This document shows, in pieces, positions 45,301 to 64,000 of a DNA stretch of 64,000 nt. The stretch's first letter is position 1. Each line of letters starts with the position of its first letter. Made by a program: the position numbers and the translations under genes. Below the pieces are notes generated by a model that saw only the letters and a list, made by a program, of their open reading frames with translations, did not search any database and had not been told where the DNA came from. This stretch comes from Mytilus edulis (lineage: Eukaryota): contig NC_092356.1 of NCBI RefSeq assembly GCF_963676685.1, positions 20,894,001-20,958,000 on the forward strand, in the 5' to 3' direction.

Positions 45301-48020
45301 CATTGTCAAATTGTTCCCTATTGTAGTTTTATTCAGCAATCAGCAAGACTTTCTAAGATAACTAATATAGGACAATGCTGTTAATTAAAAAATTACTCCA
45401 TTCCTGGATAGCCAGGACCTTTTGTTTTCCAAATAATTAATATTTCCAATAACTGATAAGTTCCAGGTCGACGGGTTCAAACAGAAAGATTTGAAAGCAG
45501 AGAAAAATGTGTATCTTAATTATAATCGACATGACTTATCAGATGACAATACCAATTACTAAAATAAGGCTTAGGCATAGTTATATACTTTAATTCAGTC
45601 ACGGACCCGCGATATCACGGGTGTGTACTTGTATCCTTAAGATAAGTCCCTGCACGATTTGCAATGTTTGCAGTTTGTTATTATCAGTACAAGGAAACTT
45701 TATGAAAATAAATTTAAGTATGCATATGTTCTAATCACCCAATGAAATAGATTGGTTTAACAAACTAGAAATATCAACTTATTTTTTTGTTAGAAGCAAA
45801 GGAATATTTTGCATAAAGGTAATATAACAAGCAAGCATGTTTAACACGACATGTACCACATGTGGAGCAGGATCTTCTTACCCTTACGGAGCAAATGAGA
45901 TTACCCCTAATTTTCTGGGGTTCTTGTTGCTTACTAGTCTTTATTTTTCTATGTTGTGTCTTGTGTACTATTAGTTGTCTGTTTGTCTTTTACTTTTTTT
46001 AGCAATGTCGTTGTCAGTTTATTTTCTATTTATGAGTTTGAATGTCCCTCTGGTAACTTTCACCCCTCTTTTTGAACAAAACATATGAAACTAATACCAT
46101 CTATCCACCGCCAGTCCCCTTCCTTTGCCCTGTCTGTTAAACCAATCCACACATTTGCTGCATTCCAATGCTCCAATCTTAAGGAATCCAAAATGAATTT
46201 TTCTTTTCCACTATCTTTCACCGTTACTAAATCTCCTCCAAGGCTCCTGCAGCTTTTGCGAGCATCATCCCATGACAATTCATGTTCGACAAACAACAAG
46301 CATGCATCTGTATACACGCGCACGTGTTTCAAAGTCCTAATTCGTGTTGGACATGCTGATAAATCTACAGAAAAAAAGCGTCAAAGAATTTTATAATATT
46401 ATAAGAAAACTTCAAAACTTAATGTTTACAGCATTCATTTAATGGGGCTTCGCATGATTTGCATAACATGACAAAACCTTTTTTCGCATAAAATAATAGC
46501 AAAACTTCTTATAGTGTCAAAATAATAATGATACGAGCGTTCGTAAACAATTCAATTTGAAAGAACTGCCATAACAAAAACCTACTAGTATTGTCGTAAA
46601 AACACATTGTTTTCCTTTAATACATGTAGGTAGGAGGTCGACCAAACTCTAATGAGATTCGATCAAATCGATTATGATGATTACGAAATTAGAAATTCAA
46701 CACGATAGAAGCAAACAATCATAATTGATTTGTATACTACATGTATCAATGCAGTGATTCAAAATGTGTGGACTACAATTATATTAATTAGTCCCCGTTT
46801 ACTCCATCATTTTCTTCTTAAAACGCATGTAGTTGTTGGTAATTCATTTGATGTGTTTGAGCGTTTGAATTTAAATATATAAGGTACATAATGCAGAGAT
46901 TTAATATTTTATAATTGTTGGTATTTAGTATAAAGACAGTATTTAACTATTAAAATGACATGTTGGACTTAAAGTGCAAGTGATATTTCTATTTGACTAG
47001 GGACGTTCGGTTTTGAATTGTCATCGGAGTTTAGTTTTACAGTGCGTATTGATACATGTATATGTTTTTCTTTATTCTACATTAGACAGAGGTATAAGGA
47101 GAGGGTTGAGATCTCACAAAACATGTTTACCCGCCGCATTTTTGCTCCTGTCCCAAGTCATGAGCCTCTCGACTTTGTTAGTCTTGTAGGTTTTATTTAA
47201 TTTTAGTTCATTTATATGTTTTAGATAAAATTGAGAATAGAAATGGGGAATATGTCAAAGAGACAACAATTCGACCAAAGAGCAGATAACAACAGAAGGC
47301 CACCAATGGGTCTTCAATGCAGCGAGAAACTCCGCATCCGGTGTCGTGCTTCAGCTGGAGTTTAGTATGACGTCCATTTTAACTGAACTATAGTACACAT
47401 TGGTACAATGTATATGTGGGCGAGCTGAGGACCACCTCCGGGTGCGGGAGTCGAAGACCCATATTGATGACCTTCAGCTGTTAACTGCTCTTGTCGGGTT
47501 GTCGTTTCTCTGACATATTCCCCATTTTATTTCTCTATTTTATTTATAGCTCTTTAACTGTTTAGCTTCTTATTCATCATTGACCTTGACAATATTATGT
47601 GTAAAGCAGCACTGTTTATTTTAATCCAGTAAAGTGTTTCAAATGCAAACAGTTTTTGAAGGGTCGTTTTAATTTTTATAAATAATATATCATGGCAAAT
47701 AAACATTATATATATATTTTATATGAAAAAAATATTATTAAGAAATTAATTGAAAGCTTGAGCGTTTGTATGGTTTTTTTTTCGGAATTATTAATATGAT
47801 CATAATTATTACTTTTAAACATACATTGAATTGTACATGTGGACAACGTTTTTGAAATTGAAGGAATAAGAATAATTTGTAATAAAACGCAAGCAACGAA
47901 TTAGGGGTAAAGAAGAAAAAAAAATGTTCAAATTAGGGAAATACAAAAAATGTTACCTGATTGGCAGAAGACTGGATTACAAAGGCCAAGTACAATGGTC
48001 AAAACTATGAACAACGACAT
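42346..48020 (-). CDS. C-type lectin gene F: secreted CTLD + ETPAP mucin tail (~313 aa)
   Basis: Exons 48020-47957 (MSLFIVLTIVLGLCNPVFCQS), 46364-46098, 43594-43403 (GQGNNHNTGFLFAGGSNEDC...WHDYPC...ACEF), 42764-42346 (ends VIIGKKRRL*). Phase-1 GT-AG. Confidence 0.88.
44972..45631 (+). mobile_element. Non-autonomous Helitron-like element
   Basis: A|TCTATAATACTAAA 5' end; 3' hairpin acccgcgatatcacgggt followed by CTTG|T (CTAG variant). Confidence 0.6.
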
Positions 48021-48772
48021 CTGAATACGTAAGAACTAAATACAATAATCTAAAAGTAGATAATGCAGTAGCACGATTTCAAGTCATTAAGTGCATTCAT
48101 GACGCCATTGTACACATATATAAATATATATACATGCAAGATTATTATCTTAAAGATCTACTTTTCGCACTTTAAGATAAATGAAAATTTCAGATTGACA
48201 TGAACTTAAAATTAAGTGACAGAAAACGACGATTCAATTCAGGTCTTTAACCAAAATATTGTTCGAATTCAAATTTTTCTTCTACTAAGTTTTTATAAAT
48301 TTAATCATGAACTGAAGATATTTCAAAATAAAATACTTATTTATTTCCATAACATAAAGGCAAACATGCAAACTTTACAGAAAAAATATACTCTTGTTGT
48401 TATTGTTTCAATTTCGAGGACGCTCGAGTGCGGCGTGATGATGTTTTCACGATTATTTTTTTTCGATCAGGAAGCCGAACATATATTGCTATCCTCTGAT
48501 AAACATGTGTACACATTATTTGTTGTATAATCAGTGCCATATATGTGTATTGCATTGGCACATAACGTTTCATATATATGTATTCACAATCTTTTTTAAT
48601 CACAGAGCATCAATTCCGATATAGATGCAGAAACTCCGCCATGTGTCGTGTATAAAACGGAGTCACCACAAAAGACCAACGCGTATAATCCCGGGTTATA
48701 GAAATGGACCATGTTCATCCTACGAGGATGTTAATAAACTTATCATAGATATCAGGACTAAATTTTGTATAT

Positions 48773-48816
48773 ACGCCAGACGCGCGTTTCGTCTACAAAA
48801 GACTCATCAGTGACGC
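48773..48816 (-). ncRNA. Type I hammerhead ribozyme (retrozyme fragment ~48733-48871)
   Basis: Reverse complement GCGTCA CTGATGA GTCT tttgt AGAC GAAA CGCGCG TC^TGGCGT. Confidence 0.85.
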
Positions 48817-50735
48817 TCGAATCCAAAAAAGTTAAAAAGGCCAAATAAAGTACGAAGTTGAAGAGCATTGAATCCACTTTAAGTATCGTCTTTTGCTATA
48901 CGGATTCTTTTAACACGCAACCACCTCGATTATGGGAATGGCCACGCTAAATTCGATACCTCTTGAACTGAAAGTTAAGGAATATTGGTAGCAATATTTG
49001 AGGATTACTAAGTTTGGCCATTAATCTTCTACTCTTATCTAACATCAAACGTACTACGCTCTTGTTCCTTTTGCTGTCTATTTATCGGCCTGTTTCCCAG
49101 TGCATAACACATTTGATTTAGTCTTGTTAATTTGTAATCGTCATCAGAATGTCTGAAATATTTGCCACTGGACTTAGTAACCAACAAGCAATCATGCAAT
49201 TAACAATCACATTGTTGAGGAACATAAATTATTAACATTAATTAAGGGTTTACGGAATTTACAAACATAAATTTAAAAAGTCGAGGCTAAAAGTAGCGAG
49301 AACTTTTAAAATATAGTTTGTTTTTATCCTGCTTTTGTAAAAGGTTACCAACATGTTTTTTCTTCTTTATTGTTGCTTTTCGTGGACCAGAATGAAAGGG
49401 GGACATCTACATGAAATGTGACGAAATCCGTGATATGATTTTTTTACTGGAAGTGCGTAATTCGAGATAAAGTAAGTTAACGTTCTACTTTATTTAAGGA
49501 ATGATTGCAATATTTTTTCTGTCTATGAAGAAATAACATAAAAATGTGGTGCATACTGAATAACGCGCGTAGCCAATGTGGTGCACACTTAAAAAACGAC
49601 GTCAGCCAATCAGAAGACGCGTTACATCCAAAATTAAATAATTTACAAAATGATGAAATAAAAACGAAACAAATATGATAAGCAACAACAAACAACTACC
49701 ACTGTTTAACAAGATCCTGAGTTGAGGTACGTGTATATAATGAACAACGACCAAGCAAGTACATGTATACCTCAACACGTTCCATATTTTCTGAATAGGC
49801 TGGGCTACACTCCAACGACCATAGCAAAGAATACAGAGGGCCACGAGATGCTGGATCGATTTGACATTCAATCAGTATACTGAAAATGTGAGATGAAGCG
49901 TTGAAAAAATCAATGAGAAGAGTGAGTAAACTCGATCGATTCCGTTCCTAAGGAGTGTCGATTGATTTAAGTGTTTATGATATATAAGTGATTCAAATAA
50001 AGGCAACAGTAGTATACCGCTATTCGAAAATCATAAATCGATTGAAAGAAAACAAAATCGGGTTACAAACCAAAACTGAGGGAAACACATCAACTATAAT
50101 AGGAAAGCAGCGAAACAGAAGACAGTATTTGCGCCTTTTCTAAGTCAGGAACCACTGGCCTTTGTTTGTCTTGTATATATTTTAATTCTAGTTCATTTAT
50201 GTGTTTTGGAGTTTAGTGTGACGTCCATTTTCACTTAACTAGAACACAATTTTATTAAGGGGCCACCTCCGGGTGCGGGATGTTCTCACTGAGTTGAAGA
50301 CCCATTGGTAGCCTTCGGCTGTTGTCTGCTCTTTGGTCGGGATGTTGTTTCTTTGACATATTTCCTATTTCAATTCTCACTTTTATTAAATACAAAGATG
50401 TGGCATGATTGCCAATTAATGAGACATATCTTCACAAGAGACCAAAAATGACAGAAATTTAAAATAACTAAAGGTCAACGTACGACCGTCAACAATGAGC
50501 AAAGCCCATACCGCAAAGTCAGCTGTAAAAGGCAACAAAACTACAATGTAAAACATTTCAACCGAGAATAACTGAGTAGTAATTAGTATCTGAGTTTGAT
50601 TATAGAAAATAATTAATTTATTGTATGTATGAATGCAAAGCCATGCCATTTGCACAGACAAATCAATGACAGAAATGTTGCTTTAATTGATTTTAAATAA
50701 ACTCATCATAGATACCAGGACTAAATTTAGTGTAT

Positions 50736-50779
50736 ATGCCAGACGCGCGTTTCGTCTACAAAAGACTCATCAGTGACGC
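50736..50779 (-). ncRNA. Type I hammerhead ribozyme (GUC site)
   Basis: GCGTCA CTGATGA GTCT tttgt AGAC GAAA CGCGCG TC^TGGCAT; one stem-I mismatch. Confidence 0.8.
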
Positions 50780-51103
50780 ACGAATCCAAAAAAGTTATAA
50801 AAAAAAACAAATAAAGTACGAAGTTGAAAAGCATTGAGGACCAAAATTCCTAATAGTATTGCCAAATACAGTTAAGGTAATCTATGCATGAGGTAGAAAA
50901 GCCTTAGTATTTCAAAAAATTCAAAAATTTGTAAAAAGTAAATTTATAAATATAATCATATCAATGACAATTCATGTCAGCACAAAAAGTGCTGACTACT
51001 GGGCTTGTGAAACTCTCGGGCAAATAAATCTCCACAAGCAGTGGCATCGACCTAGTGGTTGTAAATAAACTCATCATAGATACAAGGACTAAATTTAGTA
51101 TAT

Positions 51104-51147
51104 ACGCCATACGCGCGTTTCGTCTACAAAAGACTCATCAGTGACGC
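51104..51147 (-). ncRNA. Type I hammerhead ribozyme (GUA site)
   Basis: GCGTCA CTGATGA GTCT tttgt AGAC GAAA CGCGCG TA^TGGCGT; GUA satisfies the NUH rule. Confidence 0.8.
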
Positions 51148-51300
51148 TCGAATCCAAAAAAGTTAAAAAGGCCAAATAAAGTACGAAGTTGAAGAGCATT
51201 GAGGACCAACATTCAAAATGTTCTACTTAATGTAATATTTACAAATGCAAAGAAAAAAATCTACATTTCTAAAGATTTTTATATCCAATAATCTAAGGTT

Positions 51301-51598
51301 TTAATATACATGTAATGAAAATCCTTGAGACTGATAAGTACCGTTGTACGTCATACTACATGTATAGTGACCTTCGTCATACTTTGTTACGAAACTTAAA
51401 TACAGGTTGTATTCTCCTAGTGCATGATCACCAACAACAGCAATAGTCGATAGCCTTGGATTGGTTACTGTGTGCCACTAGCGTATAATGTTCTGGAATC
51501 TGGTGGCCCATACCATTCAATAATTCCATCAACACGTGTAATTGGACAACTAAATGTTACATTCCTTCCTGTTTTTACAAGTTTTGTCAGTATAAAGA
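51301..51598 (-). pseudogene. Immunoglobulin (V/I-set-like) domain exon with 1-nt deletion
   Basis: VFILTKLVKTGRNVTFSCPITRVDGIIEWYGPPDSRTLYASGT/fs/VTNPRLSTIAVVGDHALGEYNLYLSFVTKYDEGHYTCSMTYNGTYQSQGFSLHVY*: B-strand Cys, C-strand Trp, YNL, DxGxYxC. The exon is one base short of being in frame. Confidence 0.85.
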
Positions 51599-53689
51599 CT
51601 ACAAAACAATACACGAAGTTTTGTGTGAAAAAGTCATTAATACAGTTATTAAAATAGCTAATATCTTCGTTTTTTTCAATGACTTGAATTGCCTCCCATT
51701 GTACGCAATTGACAACTAATAGTGTTTGGCGAAAGGGGCTTTATTATAATAATGCATTCAAATATTTCATTGAATCAATAAGCTACAATGAACAAAGTGT
51801 CAATATAAAGCACCTAAACCCAAACGAAGTCGTCAAACAGGAAACAAAAAAGAAGGGAAACATATGTGTAATAATGACCCTGTCCACTAGGATGCTACTT
51901 ATAAAAGCTTCACCACATCAATCAGAAAGTACTGAAAACCGACAATCATGAAATTCAATGCGCAAAATACAGATCGACATTGAACATAATAATAATTTCG
52001 TAAACCAAGCCAACTTGAAGGACAAATATCTAATACTAAAAATGCATCAACAACATAAAAATTCATGTGTAATTCATGTAATTATTATCTTTGACAACAG
52101 TGTCAAAATCAGTGCTACATGATGCATAATAAGGCATTCAATGAATATGGATCATTTCAGTCATAAAGAGACACCCTTGTAAATACAGGGGAGACTTGCA
52201 TTACACAATCATAGGCATTAATGATCACAATTAAACACAACTACTACTAGGTGAACTTAATTCGCTTATAAATGCAAGGAACAAAAAAATAATATATAAC
52301 TCGCTTATCGCTTATATTTTCTCCCTTTTATTTGTACTGTAGTCCTGTCATGTTATGTTGTCATTTAAATGTTATAATTAACATTGCCATTAAAGCGGGA
52401 GGTTAGGCAAGCCACACAACCAGGTTCAACCCACCATTTTTTTCTTAAAATGCCCTGTACCAAGTCAGCAAAATGGTCATTTATATATAGTCGTTTCTGT
52501 GTGTGTTGCATTTTAATTCTGTGTTTCCGTAGTTCTCTTATATTTGATACGTTTCATTCAGTTTTAGTTTGTAACTCGGCTTTGTATTTTCTCTATCGAT
52601 TTAGGTGAATTTTGAACAGGGTATAGTACTGTTGCCTTTATTGAAAATATAAAATCACTTCGAAAAATGCAAAAAAAAATGTAATTTTTATGATTATAAT
52701 CTTAATCAAGTTTGTTGTAAATAAAAAAGAAACGATGCTTATGATATGTATTTAGGTCAGATAACGAACTTGAAATGTTGAAGGTATTTGACTGCGCAAT
52801 CTAAGACTTAAATGTTTTCGTAAACTTCCTAATACATAAACTTCATATGCTCTTCTAGCTCTATAACTGTACCTTTAGCTGTTGTCGACTGTGTTGATAC
52901 TGTTGTGGTAGTAGTATTATAAGGATTGGTGTTTTGTGGAATGAATGTAGTAGTTGATCCTACTTGTACAAGCTTATCAGTCCTGGCTAAAACAAGAAGA
53001 AAATGACTACAAATTAAATTCTGTTTAATAAATTCATGCTTTCCGAGAAAATAACAGCTCTTACAACAATGCACGCGCATTGCAGTCAATAGTGTCCCGC
53101 GGAATTAATGTATAAATACGTCCGACTGGGGACTTTTTACTAATTTGGAATAGATAAGGAATAGGCATGACTTTTAGTATACAATAGGAAGGTATAGTGC
53201 GCTGTTAGATTATATTTCTTAGAACATCATCATGGACATACTTGAAAAAAGTAATACTAAAACACATGATCATACAAAACTATCATAGTTATACTCTCTT
53301 ACAATTGAGGAACACATTGATTAGAGGTCAACCTACTTTTTGACCCCTATGTTTGACGCCGTTTGCTTCTAATCGACATTAAAAGAGAGCTTCTGATTTA
53401 ATAAGATATGTGGTGTCCGTCATTTTATCTTCACATACTGTTATAAAAAAAAAATGGAGTTGTATGCGATTGTCTTACAAGTAAAATGTTCATTCACCAA
53501 TTTTCTACCCAAGGAAATGTCTGTACCAAGTAAGGACCATTGTTTTTTACATACTTAAATGATGTCCTTTAACTAAATAATTCATAGGGTGGTGATAAAA
53601 CTTAACACAATAAAGCTACAGTTTAGCCTACCTTTTGCTTCTTGAATTACATTTCGAAAATGAAGGGGGATTGGTTGAGATCAAATCTT

Positions 53690-53880
53690 AATGAAAAAAA
53701 CAGAAGAGTTAAACTTCCCAAATGTAAACTTTCGATTTAAATGTGGCAATAGTCCAGTTACACCTGCCTATGTCGTATATTTCTCCCAGTTGAAACGGTA
53801 TACCTTAAATATCGTGTCCTATCATTGCGTCCTTTTGAGAGGGTTACTGCTTACAAGGAAGCTGTTGAACAAGGAGGTAG
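53690..53880 (+). mobile_element. Degenerate Penelope-like RT fragment
   Basis: LNFPNVNFRFKCGNSPVTPAYVVYFSQLKRY, homologous to the 26215 fragment. Confidence 0.6.
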
Positions 53881-54439
53881 AAAAAAGTAAAAAAACAAAA
53901 ATAATGACTACTCTAAGTGGTTGAAGTAGATGTACCCAATTTGACGATTTTCACGCCATCTCAAGGAAAGGATTGTTGTGGATAATCTGTGTCACAGATA
54001 ACCATGGATCTGTTCCAATTGTGGCCGAAATTAAGTCCTTGCTTTTTTGAAGGTGACAAAATCGACTTTGTAAAACCTTTAGTTTTTTATGTTTTTGGTT
54101 TGTGCACTATTATTGGTCTGTTAGTATTTTTTATGTTTGCATTTGAGTTGTCAGTTAGTTTAAACATATTTTATTTACTCAAAGTAAAATGGATTGGACA
54201 GAAGTAAGCCATACTTATGAAGTCCGCTCCGAATGACAATAATTTACAATACAATATTAATATAAGCATGCAATATCAAAATAAACAATATTTTACGAGT
54301 CTATCAATTGAGAAAAAAAATGAAACAGAAATAAATGTAAACATTGAAAACGATGATGATGATGATAAAGATGACGTGGATGTACCGTAAATACATTTTC
54401 TACATAACAAGAAATCTCTCAGACCTTTTGATAAATTCG

Positions 54440-55260
54440 AATACGTGTTTGAATATATTCACGTTTTGTTCATACGAGAGATTCGGATTACCAGATGTAA
54501 GTAACTTAACATTCCTGTATAAGGTCATCAGGAAGCCATCTTAGATTGTTCATCAGAATTTCTCTCTGGTGTGTATATAAAGAGCAGTCGAAAAGGAAAT
54601 GAGGTACAGTCTCAATGTTACATTTACAAAAGCAAGATGGATCAACAATTATATTGACTCTAAACAAGTCATAGTTCAAGAAAGATGAGTATCATCTGAA
54701 TTGTGTTAGAGTCATATTTAGTTTCCTCGGTCCATATAGATAGTGCTTAGGTACATCTTTATTTTTGGTATTTAACCTGAAGTTTTTAATTGATTTTAAA
54801 CTTTGATATAGAGTCTGATATTCGAAGGGACAATCCGGTATGATTCCATAGGTTAATAGTTGATGGTCTAAAAGATTCTTTAGTAAGAGATAATCTAAAA
54901 AAAAAGGAATAATGATGTCAGTGCCATTTCCCAAGGATATGTAGTTGTGCTCTGTACACTAGGTGGAACAAGTTTGCATATATAATCCGGAGCTTGGTTA
55001 TATTGAGTTTTATAAAACATTTGTAATTTTCGTCTTTTCCTCCTGTAAGCTAAAGTTTCCCACCCAATTTCCTCATACAGAATTTCAGATTTTGTAAATA
55101 AATATAGGCAAACCAGTAACTATTCTAGCAGCTTCTGGCTGCAAACTTTCAAGTTTATTAATGTTTTAAGCCATCGGCCCATATGGGCGTAAAGTGCTTT
55201 TCAATAAAGTATTAACATATCCTTTTACATAAGTTTTTCCTACAAAGTTGATACTTGAGT
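54440..55260 (-). mobile_element. Decayed 3' end of a CR1/L2-type LINE ORF2
   Basis: Minus-strand translation ...KLESLQPEAARIVTG...LYEEIGWETL...RRKRRKLQMFYK...YLYGPRKLN...DPSCFC...ETVPHFLFDC, with stops and frameshifts. Confidence 0.7.
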
Positions 55261-55580
55261 TTTCTCAGGATATTTAAATGTTTCGTAACACTGCTAATCA
55301 GTTATCAGTTGCTGGTGGCGTACGAGTTTGTATGTCACTTTGGTATCTTTCGCCTATTATGTACTTACAATGAGGAACACGATTGCCGCCGCATGTGCAA
55401 CAGAAACTACACCCACCTATTGATCACCTAAGACCACTTTTTTTTTTATTAGTTCATGTTTTTCAGTCTTTGGCCTTTTTGTGATTGTTAGACTGTTGTT
55501 TGTCTTGTCTTGTCATCTGTATTTTTTCGTTCTGTTATTGATTAGGAGTTTTGATTATTTTTTTACATTACTAATATTAA

Positions 55581-56271
55581 AGGGGCACTAGCTACGAGAT
55601 GTATAAAAAATCTGAATGTGATTTTATTTGGTTCAATCATTGTTGAAAGTGAAAGAGTGAAATAATAAATAGGTTTTAGCAGCTAGTGTGGTTCAATTTT
55701 GTCCAAATAAGCTAAGAAACTTTGATGACGAATTGTTCACTTGCAGGAATAATTCGACATAAACAAAATCTGTGTTCATGTGAACTTCAATTTTACACCT
55801 TAGCTAGAGATGGATAACGCATGAATTGTGCGTGTTACGGTATTTAAAGGAAAAGAATTTTAACAGTTAAATTGATACAATGGTAAATGATTTGATTGAC
55901 TGCTTCGATCCACAAAAAAAATAGTTCTTATACAGGTAAAAACGATGATAAATATTTATTTTCAATCTATAATATGAGATTAAACTGACCTAGGAAAATT
56001 CAATTGCACTAGTCTGCATTCAATTTATATCAATTTATGTTTATATCGCTTTTATGACCATCGGATGTCTTCGGCTGTCAACTTAATAGTTAATTAGATG
56101 GCGTCTAGACTAAAGTACACACGAAACGAAGCTACATATTATCGGGCTCATGACTTGTAAACTGTTTATTTAAGACTTTCAATAATTTGGATAACTGTTT
56201 TACATTGTTATAAATCAATTATGAGAATTTGAGTCAAATCGGTGAACATAAATTTGACAGCTAGTGTCCCT
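55581..56271. mobile_element. MITE, TTAA-type TSD
   Basis: TTAA|AGGGGCACTAGCT ... AGCTAGTGTCCCT|TCAA. Confidence 0.7.
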
Positions 56272-57353
56272 TCAAACTATTATTTTACTAGCAATATATA
56301 CTTACGAAATTCACAGGCATAAGTGTAATGATATCCCATGTTCCCTACGATTGGATGACATGGATAATCATGCCATAGGCCCCCATCACTACGTCTTATC
56401 AGTGCGCAGTCTTCGTTTGAACCACCAGCAAACAAAAATCCTGTGTCGTGGTTATTACCTTGTCCGTTCGCAAAATGTCTGTATGTTACTTGACTCCCTG
56501 AAAGTAATGTATTCTGTTAAGAAATAAGGTTATACGGTACGTAAATTAATTTAATCAATTAGTATGTTTTTAGCTTGATAAAGTCATCGCCTTGCGTTAA
56601 ACGAGGCGAACAAAATATATACGGTGATTCAAACACAATCAGTGACAAAAAAGAGAATCGTACCGCCTTGAAGGTAAATATATCTAGAAAGGTAGTACAG
56701 AATGAAGTTATCAATAAACTTTTTTCAAAAATAAATGATGCACTGATGCAATAGTTCTATTGGCTAACCGATGAACGGACCATGAAGATCATAAGTATTG
56801 GGTCCTCTCATTATCAATTTTACAACGTCTCAATAGATACCCCCTAGTAGTTTCACAGAACAATAAGATTTTAAAATCAAAGAATGTCTCTGTCCAGTCA
56901 TGTTTGTAATCATGATGTGTTGAATAACTCCCATGCTTTGAGTTTGTAAAGTATGATTGGAATGGTTGAGTTTGATTCATAGAAAAATGCGAAACATGAT
57001 TTCAATAGGTATTCAATATTTCTTTTATTTGGAGCTATCTGTCAACAATACTGCTGATATTTCGCAGACAAAACAAAAAGTGATGATCGTGATTGTGTAG
57101 ATGATTGCCAATCAACAATTCCATTAATTTCACTCGACTGAAACAAAATGAGGAATGTTATAACGCAACTATAAACACTTGTCGTTTAATTTGAAGCTTT
57201 TGCTACTAGTTGATATAATGCCAGCTTTAACCCACCATTTTCTTTGGAAAAGGCCACTACAGGGCAGTATTAAACATGGTAGTTCTTGTCCATGTGTTCC
57301 GTTCATTGATGAAGTAAAGCGTTTGGTTTTGTCAGATTTTATGAACTTTTCCC

Positions 57354-57530
57354 TTTTTAGCTCACCTGGCCCACAGGGCCAAGTGAGCTTTTCTCATCTC
57401 TTGTCGTCCGTCGTCTTCCGTCGTTGTAAACTTTTACAAAAATCTTCTCCTCTGAAACTACTGAAAATTTAACCAAACTTGGCCACAACCATCATTTGGG
57501 ATATTTAGTTTAACTGTGTCCGGTGACCCA
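57354..57530 (+). mobile_element. Helentron/HINE-like repeat fragment
   Basis: ttttagctcacctggccc acagggccaagtgagct hairpin followed by gtcgtccgtcgtc microsatellite-like tract. Confidence 0.5.
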
Positions 57531-57756
57531 GCCAATTATTGTGTAAATATTTGACTTTAATTTGATTTGACGTAGCTTGAGTTTCTTGTGGCTTTGTCAT
57601 ATCATTTAAATCACCAGAGGTAACAAAACATCGCCTTTGTAGAAGTTATTGGAGCAAGTTAAAATAATTCTATTTTTCTTTTATTTTCAGTTACAGCAAA
57701 TGTATCCAATAACAAACAAACATGAAAGACCACTTTTCTTGACAAATACAAAATAC

Positions 57757-57846
57757 CGTCTATCCACCGCCAGTCCCCTTCTTTTGGCCTTGTCTGTAGC
57801 TCCAATCCATAAGTTTTGTGCATTCTGGCAATGTTCAAAGGTTAAA
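57757..57846 (-). pseudogene. Relic 3' part of the original gene G exon 2
   Basis: LTFEHCQNAQNLWIGATDKAK(+1)EGDWRWID|GT; diverged from the upstream F-like copy and frameshifted. Confidence 0.8.
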
Positions 57847-59189
57847 CATTGTTGTCTCTTTAACATGTTCCCCATTTCCATTTTCTATTTTATTGAACAA
57901 AACATAATACTACATGTACAAATGTAATACTACATTTTCTATTTTATTGAACAAAACATAATACTACATGTAATACCGTCTATCCACCGCCAGTCCCCTT
58001 CCTTTGCCCTGTCTGTTGCACCAATCCACACATTTGCTGCATTCCAATGCTCCAATCTTAAGGAATCCAAAATGAATTTTTCTTTTGCACTATCTTTCAC
58101 CGTGACCAAATCCCCACCTAGGCTCCTGCAGCTTTTGCGAGCATCATCCCATGACAATTCATGTTCGACAAACAACAAGCATGCATCTGTATACACGCGC
58201 ACGTGTTTCAAAGTCCTAATTCGTGAGACCAAAAAAATATCATAGACATCTTAATGTATATGTTTGGCAATAAAGACCTACCATGCTTGATGTACATATA
58301 GGAATTAAAATATTTCGCATAACAGGACGAAATAAGCTCCACTAAATGATGAACATTTATCCATAGATCCAATTTTTATTCAAATCTCCTCCATAGAAAG
58401 TTTTAAAATGCAGCAAATGATGATTGGTTGATTGTCTAATCAGACGCTGACATATCACATGATTTGATAAAAGGTGTCCTACTGAAAGTCTTTCCTCATC
58501 TGGTTTGTTTATATAAAGATATTCAATAAAAAATCTCAATAACTTAAGAATATTCTTCTTTCTCCCTTTTTTTTTTGTTGTCATAATTTACCTTTAGCTA
58601 CAGCGACTCTAAAAGTTAATTCAATGTATCTAAGAAAAAATGAAAAAGTCGATCGTGTATGTCAATGAGTATGAAACATGTGATATATCGGACACTAAAT
58701 GCAGCAAATGCTAGTATGTGTATTGCTGTACAGTTGTGTTCCTGCTTCTGGTCCATATTTATATGTTTTCATTAAACAAGATCATCATGCATTCATGTGA
58801 CTGTTCCAAGTTTGGAATTTCTTTAACATGTATGTCATATGTTTTGTTTTGTTTATTGTTTTACTGGATAAATCATGTGGTTGGTTTTCTGGTGTGAATT
58901 AATGAAATGTTTGCAACGTAGGGGGATCAAATAAATCGCAGTACCGTATGTATTCTGCATACTGTTGAAGCACATACGGTGTCCTGTATACTAAACACCA
59001 AAAGAAACGCACCACCTCCAATCAGATATTTAATTTCTTTAAAATGAACAATTAAAAAGAGTTAAAAATCGATATTCCAACAGAATAAAACAATTTAACT
59101 AAGTTAGTTAATTAGGGCAATACTTTTATTTTAAAGACATTTTTTATTGGATCCAATCAAATGAAGATAAAGAAGCGAACGATACGAAA

Positions 59190-59670
59190 GGTTCATTTAT
59201 ACTCATAATTCGAAAATAAACTGACAAGACATTGCTAAAAAAACAAAAAGACAAACAGACAAATAATACATGTAGTACACAAACACAAAGTAGAAAAATA
59301 ACGACTGAGCAACACAAACCCCACCAACACTTTGGGTTATCTCAGGTGCTTCAGAGTCTGCTTCACATGTGGCACTTGTCGTGATCCTAATGTTAGTACA
59401 AACCCGGCAATGAGCATAAATCAATAGGTCACCTTTTTGGAAAGGGGACGGCATTGTAGGCACATATCCGCTAGTTTAAGTGAAACGGGCATATGATAAC
59501 TGTCAACCAACACTTGATGGTATCACCACTTAGGACTTTTGAATTGATAGCTTCTTAGTGAGCAGCTGTCCTATATCAACGACATCATGGTATGAAATAC
59601 AAGCCCTGGAATATCGTATCAACTGGGAGGTATATATTCCGTATGCAAGTGCTGCTGGAATTTTGCAACA
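59190..59670 (-). mobile_element. Penelope-like element 3' fragment
   Basis: Minus strand IPAALAYGIYTSQLIRYSRACISYHD..., followed by a 3' region also seen at ~14500, ~22540 and ~45840. Confidence 0.6.
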
Positions 59671-61161
59671 TAAGAAATTAAAAGGTCACACTAAGGCAGC
59701 TGAAATAATCTCGGAGTCTGTTCTCGTATATATAGTTTAGCATTCATCCGATCCTATTTGTCAATTTATAGAAGTAAGTCAAGACATGAGGCAGACTTGA
59801 ACGTATCTGTTGTATCCTTTGACTCAAGGTCGATGCGATATATTCTGTAAAGGATATAAGCCGATAACAATCCATTCTGAAAAATATTGGACAGGTCTTA
59901 GGCCGCATCTGTCCGGTTTTGATAGCTGATTCAATTGATGTCAATGATTTCGAAAAAGGACGTTTTTCAATTAAAAGAAAACTAAAAAACCAGGTTCAAT
60001 CCACCATTTTTGAAAATGCCTTTACCAAGTCAGGAATATGACATTTGTTATCCAGTCGTTTGATGGTTTTTTTTTTCATTTGATTTTGCCATTTGATTAG
60101 GGACTTTCCGATTTGAATTTTTTCACTGGAGTTTAGTATTTTTGTGATTTTACTGCTTTTTTGGTGGGGGGCGGGGGTATGCGCGCGTTGTTCTGTGACA
60201 AAGCAACAACACACAGCGTACATTTTTTTATGATTAATTAATATTCACATGATGAGAATGCAGTTTAGTTTTATTATTATGCATGCCGTGATTGTATTAT
60301 TAATGTCAATTGTTCTTTACCGTTTTCGAGCATTCAAAACACTTTACTTGTATCAAACATTAATAACAAACAAGTTTCATGCCAACCACAAATATTGAAG
60401 TACATTAACACAAAGCAATTCTACCAGACTAAACAGCAACCTTTACCTCTAATACGATATTATACATACCAGACTGAGTGTTAACAACGTGACTTACAAA
60501 CAAAGAGGAAAATACAAATTGAAATATTTTTCTCGTCATTTCCTTAAGATATATCTATTCACATTTTAGCCTACATAAAATGAGGACAGATTAGTTGGAA
60601 AAGATAAGACATGCATTTACCGTAAACATAACAGTGTTGGTAGAAAATAAATTTTTCTTGGAAAAAAAATTCTTCAGGAAACACGTTTGTGCTGGGTTTT
60701 GAATATTTTTAAAGCACAACATATTTATTTTTTAAATACGTATTATCAGAATCAAGGATTGAAGACCAACAACTACACACAATAGAAAACGATCGTATAC
60801 ATGTACAGTATGTTCTTATCTTGCTAGTGATTGACCTATTAGTTGAATCAGAAAATCAAACAGCTTTCTAAACCAATTTTGTTTTAACATTTTTACCTTA
60901 AAAATAGAATGTTTATTTTCGAAAAATTAAGAACCGAGTTCAGTTAAGAAACTTCGCCTTCTTTCTATAACGTCCTGTTATTATATTTAATTCTTTATTG
61001 TCACGTAAGTAAAATGAATTCATACTTGTGACATAAACAAAAATAACAACAACAAAATATAACTGAGTTGAACACCCTCAAATATATATATATATACAAG
61101 AAAAAATAACTAAGAGTCCCCTGTCATCAGCTCTAAAGACTACTAGCTTTTAATTCAATTG

Positions 61162-63156
61162 TCACACTATACGAGTAAATATCGGAAGTTCGTCAAGTTT
61201 CACACTAATATTACGCAAATATTCAGGGCCATTAATAACAAGTCCATCTATTGACGCCCTCCATCTGCCAAGGGGTAAATATATGTCTCTTGAACTTGCT
61301 CCCTGTTCTAACACAGGTGCTACAAGTGTGTTATTTCCAAGCAAAAATTCGGAGTCAATTTTTTGACATTCTTTATCCAGCGGAGATATCCACCACAAAG
61401 GGCGAATAATAGGAGCCCCTGTCCGAACGGACTCTTCGGCCAGCTCAATTATAAGATCGGAATATTCTTCGTGCAACTGCACAAACTTTCGAGATATATT
61501 GACAACTTCATCGTCGTATTGCCAAGGTACAATAGAAAACTGCATTGCCGGAAGTAGTGCAGTAGCCTCTAACCATCTAATAAATAATTCACGGTCTGGC
61601 TTATTCCCTTCATATGCATTTCCGCCAATCATATCAGGCAATACGAATGGATATCCGAGTAAACCGAATGTCAATGCAGTGTTGATCAGCGTTTTCAATC
61701 CATTTTTATTTTCCCAGTTCGAATTTTTATCAAGCATGCGTACAAACACTGGTAAATGCTGTGTGCTGACACCAACTCGAACTTCTTGATGTCGAACATC
61801 AGTATCAGAGGCATAAGCTAACTCCGCCCATTTAGTTGGATAGAAATTTGGACTGTCGTAAGCGGTTTCGAAAATATTTGGCAACCAGTTTGTTTCACCT
61901 GCATCAAATTTGAATGAGCTTATATTGTATGTTTTCTGTAAATATTGCAATTTATGTAAAAACCAATGCACTGCATCCTTATTCGAAACATCTAAAATCC
62001 CCGCTGCATTCCCATCCCACCATGAAACAAGGGCCGGCACTTGTGAATCATATTGTCTTACAAGAAAGAATCTAGATGCCGCATCTTGAAATGTTAATGA
62101 ATCAATATTGAAGAATGGATGGACCCAAATAGTTACTCTAAATCCCATTGCATTTAGTTGTTTAACCATTTCAGTTGCATTAGGAAATTTGTTGACATTA
62201 AAAACCATATCACCATATTTTGGTGTCCAGTCATCGTCTATTTCTACTTGTGAATGTGAAAAGTTATATTTTAAAATATTTGAAGCAAACTCTATTACAG
62301 TTGTTTGATTTATATCTTTATGGTATTGAGCCCATGTTGACCAAATCGGATACTTAAATAATTTTCTATCTGGAATATCTGATGGCTTGGAAAATGACGC
62401 CGACATGAAATCATGAATCTTCCGAACGTTATCAGCGATGCAAATTGTGTAATTCAAATGAGGGTACCCTCCTTTGATATTCGTATATGGATACTTTTCA
62501 TATTTAGCCATAAGGCAGATTTGTTTATCGGACGTTTGGTTGATGCTAATATAAAGCGGAACATCGCTACTAATGTTTATCCCTACTCCTTGTGAATTGA
62601 TGAAATAACGTTCCTGTACACCTCCAATACGTCTAGCGTATGAATCATTAGCAACAAAAGCAGAGAGGTTCATTGTCGTCTGCTCCAAAGGCCAGAACTG
62701 GTTCCAATCCTCGTAACCACCATACCAGTGAGCATTATCTAAATCAAAACAATCTAACAAAATTTGATCAGAGCAAGAATGTGTTCTCCAATATATATCA
62801 TAGCACTCGACAGATGCATATTTATTATAAGATATAAGTAGATCTTTTGTACCAATCCAGTCCAGACAAAGAACATTATCGGAACTCCCACAGTCCTCAG
62901 CAACTATTTTTGTACTTCCGGTATTTGATAATTGTCCGGATAGACGAACATCTGTATCTGAATTTTTTATTTTAAAATTCCAGGTATATTTTTCCAGGTG
63001 TAAATTCCCAACAACATACTCGTCTTCAATCTCAGGTTCCTCGTTATTATTTCGTCCAACTTGCCAGGCAATTATTCCAACAATTGCGCTCAGCAATATC
63101 AATGAAAGCAAGGCGAGACCAACTTTCATTCTTCCATTAATTTTGTGCCCAGACAT
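61162..63156 (-). CDS. MYORG: Glycoside hydrolase family 31, myogenesis-regulating glycosidase-like (type II membrane)
   Basis: 664-aa single-exon ORF; N-terminal TM anchor (VGLALLSLILLSAIVGIIAW); PIWSTW, EIDDDW, FKFDAGE (nucleophile), RMLDKNS (acid/base), LPDMIGGN, MQFS, PIIRPLWW motifs typical of MYORG/KIAA1161. Acceptor AG at 63166-63165 suggests an upstream exon. Confidence 0.92.
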   Translation of the reverse strand: MSGHKINGRMKVGLALLSLILLSAIVGIIAWQVGRNNNEEPEIEDEYVVGNLHLEKYTWNFKIKNSDTDVRLSGQLSNTGSTKIVAEDCGSSDNVLCLDWIGTKDLLISYNKYASVECYDIYWRTHSCSDQILLDCFDLDNAHWYGGYEDWNQFWPLEQTTMNLSAFVANDSYARRIGGVQERYFINSQGVGINISSDVPLYISINQTSDKQICLMAKYEKYPYTNIKGGYPHLNYTICIADNVRKIHDFMSASFSKPSDIPDRKLFKYPIWSTWAQYHKDINQTTVIEFASNILKYNFSHSQVEIDDDWTPKYGDMVFNVNKFPNATEMVKQLNAMGFRVTIWVHPFFNIDSLTFQDAASRFFLVRQYDSQVPALVSWWDGNAAGILDVSNKDAVHWFLHKLQYLQKTYNISSFKFDAGETNWLPNIFETAYDSPNFYPTKWAELAYASDTDVRHQEVRVGVSTQHLPVFVRMLDKNSNWENKNGLKTLINTALTFGLLGYPFVLPDMIGGNAYEGNKPDRELFIRWLEATALLPAMQFSIVPWQYDDEVVNISRKFVQLHEEYSDLIIELAEESVRTGAPIIRPLWWISPLDKECQKIDSEFLLGNNTLVAPVLEQGASSRDIYLPLGRWRASIDGLVINGPEYLRNISVKLDELPIFTRIV

Positions 63157-64000
63157 AAAAACTTCTGAAATGTTTGAATGATATGTTATTACTACAATTA
63201 AATTGACACAAAATACGTAAATCCTAATAAATAAATGGACAAAACGTGTCTAAATATCGGGGGAAAGTTTATAAACAGTAAATCTACTTTAATTACTAAA
63301 AGTAGAAATTGCAAGACAAATATTGAACCGATTTCGCTTCTGTCCAATTTTACCTTAGAATTAATCAAAAATGAACTTTTTTTGTTTGACGTGGTTAAAA
63401 GATTTATCCCTCCTGTTTTTTTTCTCAGTCGAATAAAAAACAATTACTACGTGGTGTACATATTAGGACGTGCAGCATGTACAGATATGAGACTCCTCTC
63501 AGTTGCAAAAGGGACGTTATTTTGGGATTTCATGCAAGCTCTCTGCCCTAACAAACATACCTTAATTTTCTAATGGTAGTACCCTTCCTTTAGTATATCT
63601 TCAGAACCTATCTATAGTATTATGTAATATTATTATTGTTAATTTATTCTCGTCATGAATGTGCATGAAATATTTGCCACTACGCGTACGTAAAGCAAGC
63701 AACACTCAATCTGTTAATTGTTTAGAACTGAATAAGTGTAATGATGAGCGGATGTACTACCTGGCAAAAAACAAAATCATTTCCATTAGTTTTTTAAAAA
63801 CCCTTTTTCGTTCGCAACCGGATGTGACGTACTATGGTTTGGTGGTATTTCACCTTAGCACCTGTTTGAAAATTTCAAATTTGCACCCTATATGCAAAAA
63901 AGTCAATCTAAAGTCATTTTTGGGGATAAAAATATAAAAATAAGTTCTAAAACTAGATACAAAAGATATTTTTCTATAAATAAGTCGTTTTTGTTGTGCT

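What the first reader, a model, noticed from the sequence alone, without database searches (positions are those of the whole stretch)
51301..56497. Cryptic CTLD-linker-immunoglobulin architecture (reverse of CREP/FREP order)
Seen in sequence: exon 3 (phase 1) can splice to a 114-nt Thr-rich exon (52986-52873) and then to an exon at 51598 encoding a clear Ig fold (VTFSC...EWYG...GEYNL...DEGHYTC, ~62 residues between cysteines). It ends in a stop with no TM. A single missing base at ~51470 creates a premature TAA (51465-51467), which hides it from ORF finders. Established: gastropod FREPs/CREPs place Ig domains N-terminal to the lectin domain. Inference: a soluble lectin-Ig hybrid with the opposite order, made by exon shuffling; possibly intact in other haplotypes or species.
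Basis: partly seen in the sequence, partly recalled or inferred. Interest (0 to 1): 0.8.

Follow-up and report, generated by a model that had tools for sequence, protein, structure and literature searches.

The report
Broken mussel lectin–Ig chimeric gene
A duplicated mussel sugar-binding (C-type lectin) gene has had its tail cut short and spliced to a borrowed antibody-like (Ig) exon; the new tail is transcribed in other mussels, but the copy in this assembly is broken in two places.

Summary
The sequence features are real. On the minus strand, a 114-nt Thr-rich exon (52986-52873) is spliced exactly as predicted to a terminal exon (51598-51301). RNA-derived contigs from two runs of two studies carry that joint and run past the stop.

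The terminal exon encodes one V-type Ig domain of a large mussel exon family. The frame is broken at ACACA, 51473-51469. An intact relative aligns without a gap if the window has two extra bases. One RNA contig is exactly two letters shorter over this exon.

The Thr-rich exon is the truncated start of the mucin-tail exon that two paralogues in the window still have whole. That places it by descent in lectin copy "G".

Three points weaken the reading:
- No read shows CTLD exon 3 joined to the Thr exon.
- G's exon 2 has lost about 20 nt, including its old acceptor and first Cys codon.
- No orthologous protein was found.

CTLD-then-Ig order is already known from Botryllus BSCLT, and Ig-bearing bivalve CTLD proteins are catalogued. 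Verdict: a real exon-shuffled chimera, probably a null allele here, of moderate interest.

The parts
60470..60539 (-). Candidate exon 1 of lectin copy G. It encodes the signal-peptide-like MTRKIFQFVFSSLFVSHVVNTQS, followed by G|gtatgt (phase 1).
   Evidence: Found by a script scan for ATG plus a hydrophobic core plus a donor; sequence read. It has the same length, phase and ...Q-S/A + G|GTA ending as the paralogues' exon 1, but no DNA similarity to them. Inferred, not shown by reads.
57977..58224 (-). Exon 2 of G: the N-terminal half of the C-type lectin domain (TLKHVRVYTDACLLFVEHELSWDDARKSC...WIGATDRAKEGDWRWID). About 20 nt at its old 5' end are missing.
   Evidence: Pfam Lectin_C at 47.7 bits (cut-off 22.6), E=2.9e-12. 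Alignment with paralogues p43 and p32 shows loss of the ancestral acceptor (tgtag|) and of the codons for ..LSACP... The remaining strong acceptor ttag|G is out of frame with a phase-1 exon 1 (read).
57752..57845 (-). Degenerate partial duplicate of the 3' end of exon 2, lying in intron 2, with a frame-breaking extra base.
   Evidence: Self-BLAST gives 82% identity to 57972-58061; sequence read.
56307..56497 (-). Exon 3 of G: the C-terminal half of the CTLD (…GQGNN…EDCALIRRSDGGLWHDYPC…YACEF), with a phase-1 donor C|GTAAG.
   Evidence: Translation. The donor GTAAG is invariant in 4 of 4 paralogous copies in the window. An RNA contig of a close copy is spliced at exactly 56307 (loose end). No Pfam hit when scanned alone.
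52873..52986 (-). Exon 4 of G: a Thr-rich linker (RTDKLVQVGSTTTFIPQNTNPYNTTTTTVSTQSTTAK). It is the truncated start of the family's mucin-tail exon.
   Evidence: RNA contigs X1 record 3 and X2 record 19 cover it end to end with no gaps. Homology to exon 4 of p43 and p32 ends at the GT donor. It is unique in the genome, 1 of 1 match.
51301..51598 (-). Terminal exon: one V-type Ig domain plus the stop TAA (51303-51301). It is frame-broken in this assembly.
   Evidence: RNA contigs are joined to it from 52873. Family profile hits. tblastn of the intact relatives P0024, P0068, P0028 and P0014. Profile of alignment A5 against PDB: polymeric Ig receptor V domains, E=6.3e-28. Pfam V-set in 15 of 17 members of A5.
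51469..51473 (-). Site of the frame break: ACACA, where relatives have one Thr codon. It creates the premature TAA at 51467-51465.
   Evidence: The two tblastn frames overlap here. X2's contig has 2 letters fewer over 51293-51597. The position of that indel inside the exon was not shown.
52352..52642 (.). Dispersed repeat inside intron 4.
   Evidence: 73-81% similar copies at 4444-4769 and 49996-50102. Very high DNA word depth.
54500..55120 (-). Decayed retroelement tail inside the 3.3-kb intron 3. It has open pieces such as ...ETVPHFLFDCSLYTHQREIL...; calling this a LINE tail is recalled, not tested.
   Evidence: Open stretches; high repeat depth.
50736..50779 (-). Hammerhead type I ribozyme of the retrozyme-like repeat that directly follows the Ig exon's stop.
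   Evidence: Rfam RF00163 at 34.5 bits (gathering 34), E=1.2e-5. Repeat copies at 50688-50849, 51056-51214 and 48726-48871.

Best explanation
The interval holds the 3' half of a lineage-specific chimeric gene.

The window carries a tandem cluster of secreted lectin genes built as signal peptide, C-type lectin domain, then a Thr/Pro-rich mucin tail. All exons are in phase 1. In copy G a rearrangement cut the mucin-tail exon after 114 nt. The new flank supplies a GT donor, and the shortened Thr-rich exon is now spliced to a terminal exon 1.27 kb downstream. That exon is a captured member of the mussel V-type Ig exon family (motif VG-D/N-H-x-x-GEYNL ... D-x-G-x-Y-x-C), and its old donor position is now a stop.

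The intended product is a secreted signal peptide-CTLD-Thr linker-V-Ig protein with no membrane anchor. It would have two recognition modules on one chain. The lectin head has non-canonical QGN and WHD in place of EPN/QPD and WND.

In the haplotype assembled here the gene is most likely a null or decaying allele. Two extra bases break the Ig frame, and because the stop lies in the last exon the message would probably escape nonsense-mediated decay. About 20 nt, including the ancestral acceptor and first Cys codon of exon 2, are also gone.

Other individuals transcribe the Thr-Ig part, with contig lengths that fit an intact frame.

Shown: the Thr-to-Ig splice, the Ig identity, the break, and the exon-4 homology. 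Inferred: the exon 3 to exon 4 joint, exon 1, secretion, and any binding function.
For: - Splice 52873|51598 is carried by contigs of two runs from two studies, at depths 16.3 and 14.9. The bin depths (9.37 and 8.36) equal exon-only coverage, so there is no read-through to the stop at 52829.
- Paralogues p43 and p32 have exon 3 followed by a T/P-rich exon 4 that ends GKKRRL*.
- G's Thr exon shares their pre-acceptor TTCTTGTTT, their CCAGGA/CCAAGA start and their ...TCAACAGCTAA stretch. Similarity stops at G's donor.
- The donor GTAAG after ACEF is invariant in 4 of 4 copies. A close copy is seen spliced at 56307.
- The Ig pieces match one family profile back to back. V-set is found in 15 of 17 aligned members, and the profile hits pIgR V domains at E=6.3e-28.
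- Relatives' exons end in A|GTAAG or G|GTAAG, phase 1 (read).
- The break is at ACACA. X2's contig is 2 letters shorter and X1's a net 1 longer.
- dN/dS of G against p43 is 0.15 for exon 2 and 0.11 for exon 3, so the lectin head was under constraint until recently.
- Both Thr-Ig contigs stop 27 and 32 letters into the unknown upstream exon. That is what a 31-mer graph would do at an exon end shared with paralogous transcripts (my inference).
- X1 also has low-depth contigs on the single-copy intron directly upstream of the Thr exon, 52988-53793. This fits transcription starting further upstream.
Against: - No read or contig shown to me joins exon 3 to the Thr exon. The 27 and 32 upstream letters were not placed on the stretch.
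- X2 has depth 0 on 56373-56571 although it expresses Thr-Ig. The raw RNA run X24 has a little depth on exon 3 and none on the Thr or Ig exons. The tool warns that holes prove nothing.
- The exon-3-like contig in X1 belongs to a copy with a different exon 4 that this assembly lacks.
- G's exon 2 acceptor is lost, and the candidate exon 1 is unsupported by homology or reads.
- No protein with this Ig exon was found among 1.84 billion representatives; the best identity was 54%. None was found in the word search. So there is no sign of a conserved, annotated orthologue.
- The positions of the contigs' indels are unknown, so frame restoration is inferred from lengths only.
Confidence: 0.55

Rival explanations
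1. The Thr-Ig transcript is independent of the lectin exons. The CTLD exons 2-3 of G would be dead relics of a partial duplication. The expressed RNA would start at another promoter or repeat-derived exon, and encode at most a small Thr-rich plus Ig peptide, or nothing.
For: - X2 has the Thr-Ig contig at depth 14.9 but depth 0 on 56373-56571. X24 shows the reverse pattern.
- Exon 2's acceptor is deleted, and there is no homologous exon 1.
- A unitig break about 30 nt into the upstream exon fits a repeat as well as it fits a paralogous exon.
Against: - The Thr exon is exon 4 of this gene family by descent. It sits in the right order, strand and phase behind G's exon 3.
- No signal-peptide-like first exon with a phase-1 donor was found between 52987 and 56306; the 4 candidates in 52987-61160 are all poor.
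- The low dN/dS of G's CTLD exons argues against a long-dead relic.
- A hole in contig depth is no finding, according to the tool's own text.
Confidence: 0.3
2. The gene is intact in the sequenced animal too. On this reading the two extra bases at 51469-51473, and perhaps the 20-nt gap at exon 2, are assembly or polishing errors.
For: RNA contigs from two other animals differ in length from the window in a frame-restoring way. A CA/ACACA step is a plausible slip site (my inference).
Against: - No indel at this site was among the rows shown for the DNA run X17, though 23 rows were hidden.
- Two independent lesions in one copy suggest real decay.
- Mussel genomes are known for null and presence/absence alleles (recalled).
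- The raw reads of the assembled animal were not examined.
Confidence: 0.1
3. There is no real feature: a chance open frame with Ig-like motifs next to a lectin gene.
For: The Pfam scores of the pieces alone are below the curated cut-offs.
Against: There are spliced RNA contigs in two studies. The family profile scores 61.9 and 23.6 bits. tblastn of intact relatives gives E=5e-19.
Confidence: 0.02

Closest known systems
The window's own paralogues p43 (exon 4 at 42764-42346) and p32 (exon 4 at 32344-32052): signal peptide-CTLD-mucin-tail lectins
   Same: Same exon order and phases. The CTLD exons are 84-97% identical in DNA. The same donor follows ACEF. G's Thr exon is homologous to the first 115-130 nt or so of their exon 4.
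   Different: They keep a long (N)IETPAPTT-type repeat tail that ends GKKRRL*. G lost that tail and gained an Ig exon. G also lost the start of exon 2.
BSCLT of the tunicate Botryllus schlosseri (as described in a passage of PMC4944128)
   Same: A CTLD at the N-terminus and a single Ig domain at the C-terminus, which is the same domain order as the model here.
   Different: It is from a different phylum and there is no evidence of common descent. I saw only one sentence about it and compared no sequence. The mussel model has a Thr-rich linker, and its full reading frame is unproven.
Gastropod CREPs / BgSel of Biomphalaria glabrata (passage of PMC4944128; search listing)
   Same: Mollusc proteins that combine IgSF and C-type lectin domains in one secreted chain.
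   Different: They have Ig N-terminal and CTLD C-terminal, whereas the order here is reversed. The Ig exon here comes from the mussel GEYNL-type V-set family. Relatedness to CREP IgSF domains was not tested.
Bivalve CTLD-containing proteins with extra domains (Saco et al. 2023, PMC10140915; passages read)
   Same: That survey reports bivalve-specific CTLD architectures whose added domains include immunoglobulins. The general kind is therefore already catalogued, including in Mytilus.
   Different: The passages do not give domain order or this gene.
Mussel multi-Ig proteins of the GEYNL family, e.g. Mytilus californianus 'junctional adhesion molecule-like' XP_052062733.1 (P0007)
   Same: The same V-type Ig exon type, with the motif GEYNL...D-x-G-x-Y-x-C. 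Each domain is one phase-1 exon.
   Different: Those proteins are arrays of 3-14 such domains without a lectin head. G's Ig domain is at most 54% identical to any of them.
PcLec3 of the crayfish Procambarus clarkii (abstract of PMC4944128)
   Same: A small secreted protein with one Ig and one CTLD. Its functional data show that both domains can bind carbohydrates and microbes, which gives a working model for such hybrids.
   Different: It is an arthropod protein. The abstract lists Ig first and then CTLD. No homology was tested.

Membership tests
C-type lectin-like domain (Pfam PF00059) | Profile match above the curated cut-off | tested here: met
   Exon 2 alone scores 47.7 bits against a cut-off of 22.6, E=2.9e-12, on profile positions 3-59 of 107. 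Exon 3 alone gave no hit. The joined exons were not scanned, by rule.
C-type lectin-like domain (Pfam PF00059) | Core Cys framework and the WIG motif; for the long form, the extra N-terminal Cys pair | tested here: inconclusive
   Read...ARKSC, WIGATD, EDCALI, YPC and YACEF are all present. The first Cys of the N-terminal pair (ACP in p43 and p32) is deleted in G, while its partner (DAC) remains.
C-type lectin-like domain (Pfam PF00059) | Canonical Ca2+/sugar site (EPN or QPD, plus WND) | tested here: not met
   G and its paralogues read GQGNN and WHD at these places. The canonical motifs are recalled knowledge. Sugar binding therefore cannot be assumed.
Immunoglobulin V-set domain | Profile match | tested here: inconclusive
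   On the pieces: igC gives V-set at 17.7 bits (cut-off 26) and I-set at 16.8 (cut-off 23.7); igN gives none. Relatives pass: L011 V-set at 35.1, L004 I-set at 31.5. V-set at E<=0.01 is found in 15 of 17 members of A5. The read-through peptide was not scanned, by rule.
Immunoglobulin V-set domain | Cys...Trp...D-x-G-x-Y-x-C core, and similarity to solved Ig domains | tested here: met
   VTFSC, EWYG and DEGHYTC are present. The profile of A5, which contains both pieces, hits polymeric Ig receptor V domains at E=6.3e-28 and JAML at 4.3e-18.
Mussel GEYNL-type Ig exon family | Single phase-1/phase-1 exon with VG-D/N-H-x-x-GEYNL and D-x-G-x-Y-x-C | tested here: met
   The family profile scores 61.9 bits (igC) and 23.6 bits (igN) on adjoining positions. 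There are 71 other matches in the genome at E<=10, of which 11 were inspected and all 11 were open. Difference: G's exon ends in a stop where relatives have the donor.
CREP / VIgL-type Ig-lectin proteins of gastropods | IgSF domain(s) N-terminal, lectin domain C-terminal | tested here: not met
   In the model the lectin exons (58224-56307) precede the Ig exon (51598-51301) on the coding strand.
Expressed, intact protein-coding gene | Spliced transcript covering all exons | tested here: inconclusive
   The exon 4-exon 5 joint is seen in 2 of 3 RNA or RNA-like runs laid (X1 and X2, not X24). The exon 3-exon 4 joint is seen in 0 of 3.
Expressed, intact protein-coding gene | Uninterrupted reading frame in this assembly | tested here: not met
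   There is a premature TAA at 51467-51465 after the ACACA break. The ancestral exon 2 acceptor is deleted, and the remaining strong acceptor is out of frame.

The most novel reading that the evidence does not exclude
In other mussel haplotypes this locus would make an intact secreted CTLD-mucin linker-V-Ig protein. That would be a segregating (functional versus null) chimeric immune lectin born by truncation of a mucin exon and capture of an Ig exon. It would be the first mollusc example with the lectin head N-terminal to the Ig domain, opposite to CREPs, caught together with its unshuffled paralogues in the same cluster.
Probability: 0.35. Interest if true: 0.5.

Novelty: new variant of a known kind. 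Interest (0 to 1): 0.35.

Why it matters
Bivalve immune-gene families (C-type lectins, Ig-domain proteins) are hugely expanded, and new domain combinations are thought to arise by exon shuffling. Here both the parent architecture (CTLD plus mucin tail, two copies) and the derived one (CTLD, short Thr linker, Ig) lie in one 30-kb cluster. The breakpoint sits exactly at the new splice donor, and RNA shows that the new joint is used.

That makes it a clean, datable case of domain gain, and possibly a functional-versus-null polymorphism of the kind that mussel pan-genome work describes.

It does not change what is known about lectin-Ig hybrids in general. The domain pair and both domain orders are already on record elsewhere.

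Tried and rejected
Searches that found nothing:
- The word search for proteins carrying the N-terminal Ig half found no candidate.
- The search of 1.84 billion representatives with the C-terminal Ig half gave 67 hits at E<=0.001. Nearly all were multi-Ig proteins and none was more than 54% identical, so no orthologue and no CTLD-Ig protein surfaced.
- The three closest hits (P0024, P0028, P0014) are single exons from contigs of about 1 kb from Logan/ENA/JGI, without context. P0028 looks like a palindromic contig artefact.
- Two exact-pattern scans of metagenome contigs found nothing.

Exon 1:
- A homologue of the paralogues' signal-peptide exon upstream of G was not found.
- A non-homologous candidate was found.
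- A scan for an alternative signal-peptide first exon between the Thr exon and exon 3 gave nothing convincing.

Considered and rejected:
- That G ends at the read-through stop after exon 3 (ACEFRKYILLVK*). The donor is conserved in 4 of 4 copies, and the paralogues have a downstream exon 4.
- That G ends at 52829. The depth fits the spliced exon only.
- That the Ig exon splices onward to a TM exon. The contigs run collinear past the stop.
- That the exon-3-like contig in X1 is G itself. Its exon 2 end, exon 3 start and exon 4 differ, and its exon 4 is absent from the assembly.

Not done:
- The broken Ig exon was searched as two pieces.
- Supplementary tables of PMC10140915 were not seen. They may list this gene or architecture.

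Full report
**Setting.** The window is AT-rich eukaryotic DNA (GC about 0.30-0.38). It comes from a 1.37-Gb assembly whose largest pieces number 14. Earlier notes of this scan call it the blue mussel Mytilus edulis; I did not test that.

On the minus strand the window holds a tandem cluster of C-type lectin genes. Self-BLAST finds exon 2 and exon 3 of the copy in question ("G", 58224-57977 and 56497-56307) repeated in three places:
- 46346-46069 and 43627-43396 (copy p43);
- 34355-34116 and 32815-32584 (copy p32);
- more weakly near 26.4-26.6 kb.

**Observation.**
- Exon 3 ends ...YACEF followed by C|GTAAG.
- The Thr-rich exon is 52986-52873, flanked by ttttag| and |gtacag.
- The last exon starts at 51598 after tgtag|.
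- It reads ...GRNVTFSCPITRVDGIIEWYGPPDSRTLYASGTQ, then TAA (51467-51465).
- In another frame it continues TNPRLSTIAVVGDHALGEYNLYLSFVTKYDEGHYTCSMTYNGTYQSQGFSLHVY, then TAA (51303-51301).

**Transcript evidence (the single read-laying run).** I laid three RNA or RNA-like runs (X1, X2, X24) and one DNA run (X17) on 51000-56950.

A 479-letter contig of X1 (depth 16.3) and a 450-letter contig of X2 (depth 14.9, a different study) each lie on 52873-52986 and then directly on 51597 downward. One unaligned letter sits at the joint. This is the predicted splice.
- The contigs continue 39 nt and 8 nt past the stop at 51303-51301, so this is a terminal exon with no onward splice to a TM exon.
- The bin depths over 52791-52989 (9.37 and 8.36) equal what the 114-nt exon alone would give. 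There is therefore no read-through to the stop at 52829.
- The raw RNA run X24 (19% of it read) has no reads on either exon.

**Ig identity.** Pfam on the four exon pieces gives Ig hits for only one: the C-terminal Ig piece, V-set E=0.0043, 17.7 bits, below the cut-off. The relatives make the case.
- The genome holds 71 other matches to this piece at E<=10. The best is 51% identical.
- All 11 that I inspected are single open exons of 102-174 codons with the pattern ...C-P...W...VG-D/N-H-x-x-GEYNL...D-x-G-x-Y-x-C. They end in read-through of A|GTAAG or G|GTAAG, which means phase 1.
- A profile of 12 intact relatives matches the two window pieces back to back: positions 20-57 at 23.6 bits and 60-114 at 61.9 bits.
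- Two relatives pass Pfam's own cut-offs: L011 V-set at 35.1 bits and L004 I-set at 31.5 bits.
- V-set is found in 15 of 17 members of alignment A5.
- The A5 profile hits V domains of the polymeric Ig receptor at E=6.3e-28.

**The break.** The closest intact relative, P0024 (106 aa, from contigs of about 1 kb), aligns to frame -3 up to 51471 and to frame -2 from 51471. One Thr is shared between the two alignments and there is no gap. Relatives read ...NGT-V/E-VNPRL. The window reads ...SGT and then VTNPRL, with ACACA where one ACA is expected.
- The simplest reading is therefore two extra bases, not one missing base.
- Over 51293-51597, X2's contig has 303 letters against the window's 305, with 2 gap letters.
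- Over 51262-51597, X1's contig has 337 letters against 336, with 5 gap letters.
- Both differences restore the frame modulo 3. The rows that would place these indels were among the 23 not shown, so this remains an inference.

**Where the Thr exon comes from.** The paralogues have a fourth exon in phase 1 after the same donor.
- p43: 42764-42346, 139 codons.
- p32: 32344-32052, 97 codons.
- Both are Thr/Pro-rich with (N)IETPAPTT-like repeats, and both end GKKRRL*.
- GTAAG after ACEF is invariant in 4 of 4 copies.
- A contig in X1 shows a close copy spliced exactly at 56307 to a p32-like exon 4.

G's Thr exon shares with them the TTCTTGTTT before the acceptor, the CCAGGA/CCAAGA/CTAGAA start, the T-rich body and a ...TCAACAGCTAA stretch. 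Similarity ends at G's GT donor. The Thr exon is thus the truncated exon 4 of this lectin family, lying in order behind G's exons 2 and 3. The breakpoint created, or coincides with, the donor that now feeds the Ig exon. Both the Thr exon and the Ig exon are unique in the genome.

**What is not shown.** No contig shown to me joins exon 3 to the Thr exon. The 27 and 32 letters upstream of the Thr exon in the two contigs were not placed.
- X2 has no depth on 56373-56571.
- The only exon-3-like contig (X1) has a different exon 2 end, exon 3 start and exon 4. Its exon 4 is absent from this assembly, where only p32 and its haplotig match, each with 3 mismatches. The genome has no exon 3 copy between 88% and 100% identity: 6 places were found in all.
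- In favour of the joint: both contigs stop about 30 letters into the upstream exon. A 31-mer graph would do that at an exon end shared with more abundant paralogous messages.
- Also in favour: X1 has low-depth contigs on the single-copy intron just upstream of the Thr exon. That suggests transcription entering from further upstream. Both points are my inference.

**State of G's 5' half.**
- Exon 2 scores 47.7 bits on Lectin_C.
- dN/dS against p43 is 0.15 for exon 2 and 0.11 for exon 3, which does not look like an old pseudogene.
- But G lacks about 20 nt that in p43 and p32 hold the acceptor tgtag| and the codons ..LSACP... The strong acceptor that remains (ttag|G at 58224) is out of frame with a phase-1 first exon.
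- No homologue of the paralogues' signal exon lies between exon 2 and the next gene at 61165.
- A non-homologous candidate of the same build lies at 60539-60470: MTRKIFQFVFSSLFVSHVVNTQS + G|gtatgt.
- A degenerate partial copy of exon 2 sits in intron 2.

**Mechanism proposed.** A tandem duplicate of a signal peptide-CTLD-mucin lectin lost most of its mucin exon and acquired a V-type Ig exon as its new last exon. All exons are in phase 1, so the frame is kept. The product would be a secreted two-module recognition protein. Its lectin site is non-canonical: QGN and WHD where I recall EPN/QPD and WND.

The allele assembled here carries two lesions and is probably null. Its premature stop lies in the last exon, so the message may persist. 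Other animals appear to carry and transcribe a version with an open Ig frame. I give the whole picture 0.55. The main rival, a Thr-Ig RNA unconnected with the lectin exons, gets 0.3.

**Comparison with what is known.**
- A passage of PMC4944128 states that Botryllus BSCLT has the CTLD N-terminal and Ig C-terminal. It also states that Biomphalaria BgSel and CREPs have the reverse order, and that a Drosophila CTL carries several Ig and FN3 domains.
- Passages of PMC10140915 state that bivalve-specific CTLD architectures include immunoglobulin domains. Its supplements were closed.

So neither the domain pair nor the order is new in principle. What is new here is a mollusc instance of the CTLD-first order with its origin legible in the cluster. 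No orthologous protein was found and no metagenome contig.

**Verdict.** A real, transcribed exon-shuffling product, broken in this haplotype, with its link to the lectin head still to be shown. Interest 0.35. It is a new variant of a known kind.

Noticed in passing
window 42346-48020 and 32052-37496 (minus strand): Two complete-looking paralogous genes. Each has a signal-peptide exon (MSLFIVLTIVLGLCNPVFCQS / MTSFRIVPVIIAIVHQVYCQA), two CTLD exons and a Thr/Pro-rich exon with (N)IETPAPTT-like repeats that ends in the basic tail GKKRRL*. This is a secreted lectin-mucin family with a conserved C-terminal motif of unknown role.
   Followed up: partly
runs X1, mapped at window 56307-56489: An expressed lectin copy at least 92% like G's exon 3, but with a p32-like exon 4. 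It is absent from this assembly. It could be a presence/absence gene or a very divergent allele.
   Followed up: partly
window 50688-50849, 51056-51214, 48726-48871; hammerhead at 50736-50779 (minus): Retrozyme-like repeat copies start right after the Ig exon's stop. Rfam finds one type I hammerhead just at the gathering score. RNA depth on the repeat is enormous in all three RNA runs.
   Followed up: partly
window 61165-63249 (minus strand): A single 695-codon open frame with a membrane-anchor-like start (…MKVGLALLSLILLSAIVGIIAW…), apparently intronless. It resembles a glycoside hydrolase family 31-type enzyme by eye (recalled, not scanned).
   Followed up: no
window 57752-57845 (minus strand): A decayed partial duplicate of the 3' end of G's exon 2, with its donor GACG|gt kept. 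It is a sign of local rearrangement in intron 2.
   Followed up: partly
window 59206-59475 and 45777-45999: Copies of a dispersed element whose translation gives Cys/Phe-rich strings (…GGVCVAQSLFFYFVFV… / …WGSCCLLVFIFLCCV…). They mimic signal peptides in ORF scans.
   Followed up: no
protein P0028 (JGI/IMG contig): Its second half is the antisense translation of the same Ig exon's first half. The source contig is probably a palindromic assembly artefact.
   Followed up: partly
window 57978-58223 versus 56307-56495 compared with p43: Synonymous divergence between G and p43 is 0.11 in exon 2 but 0.50 in exon 3. This hints at gene conversion of exon 2 between the copies.
   Followed up: no
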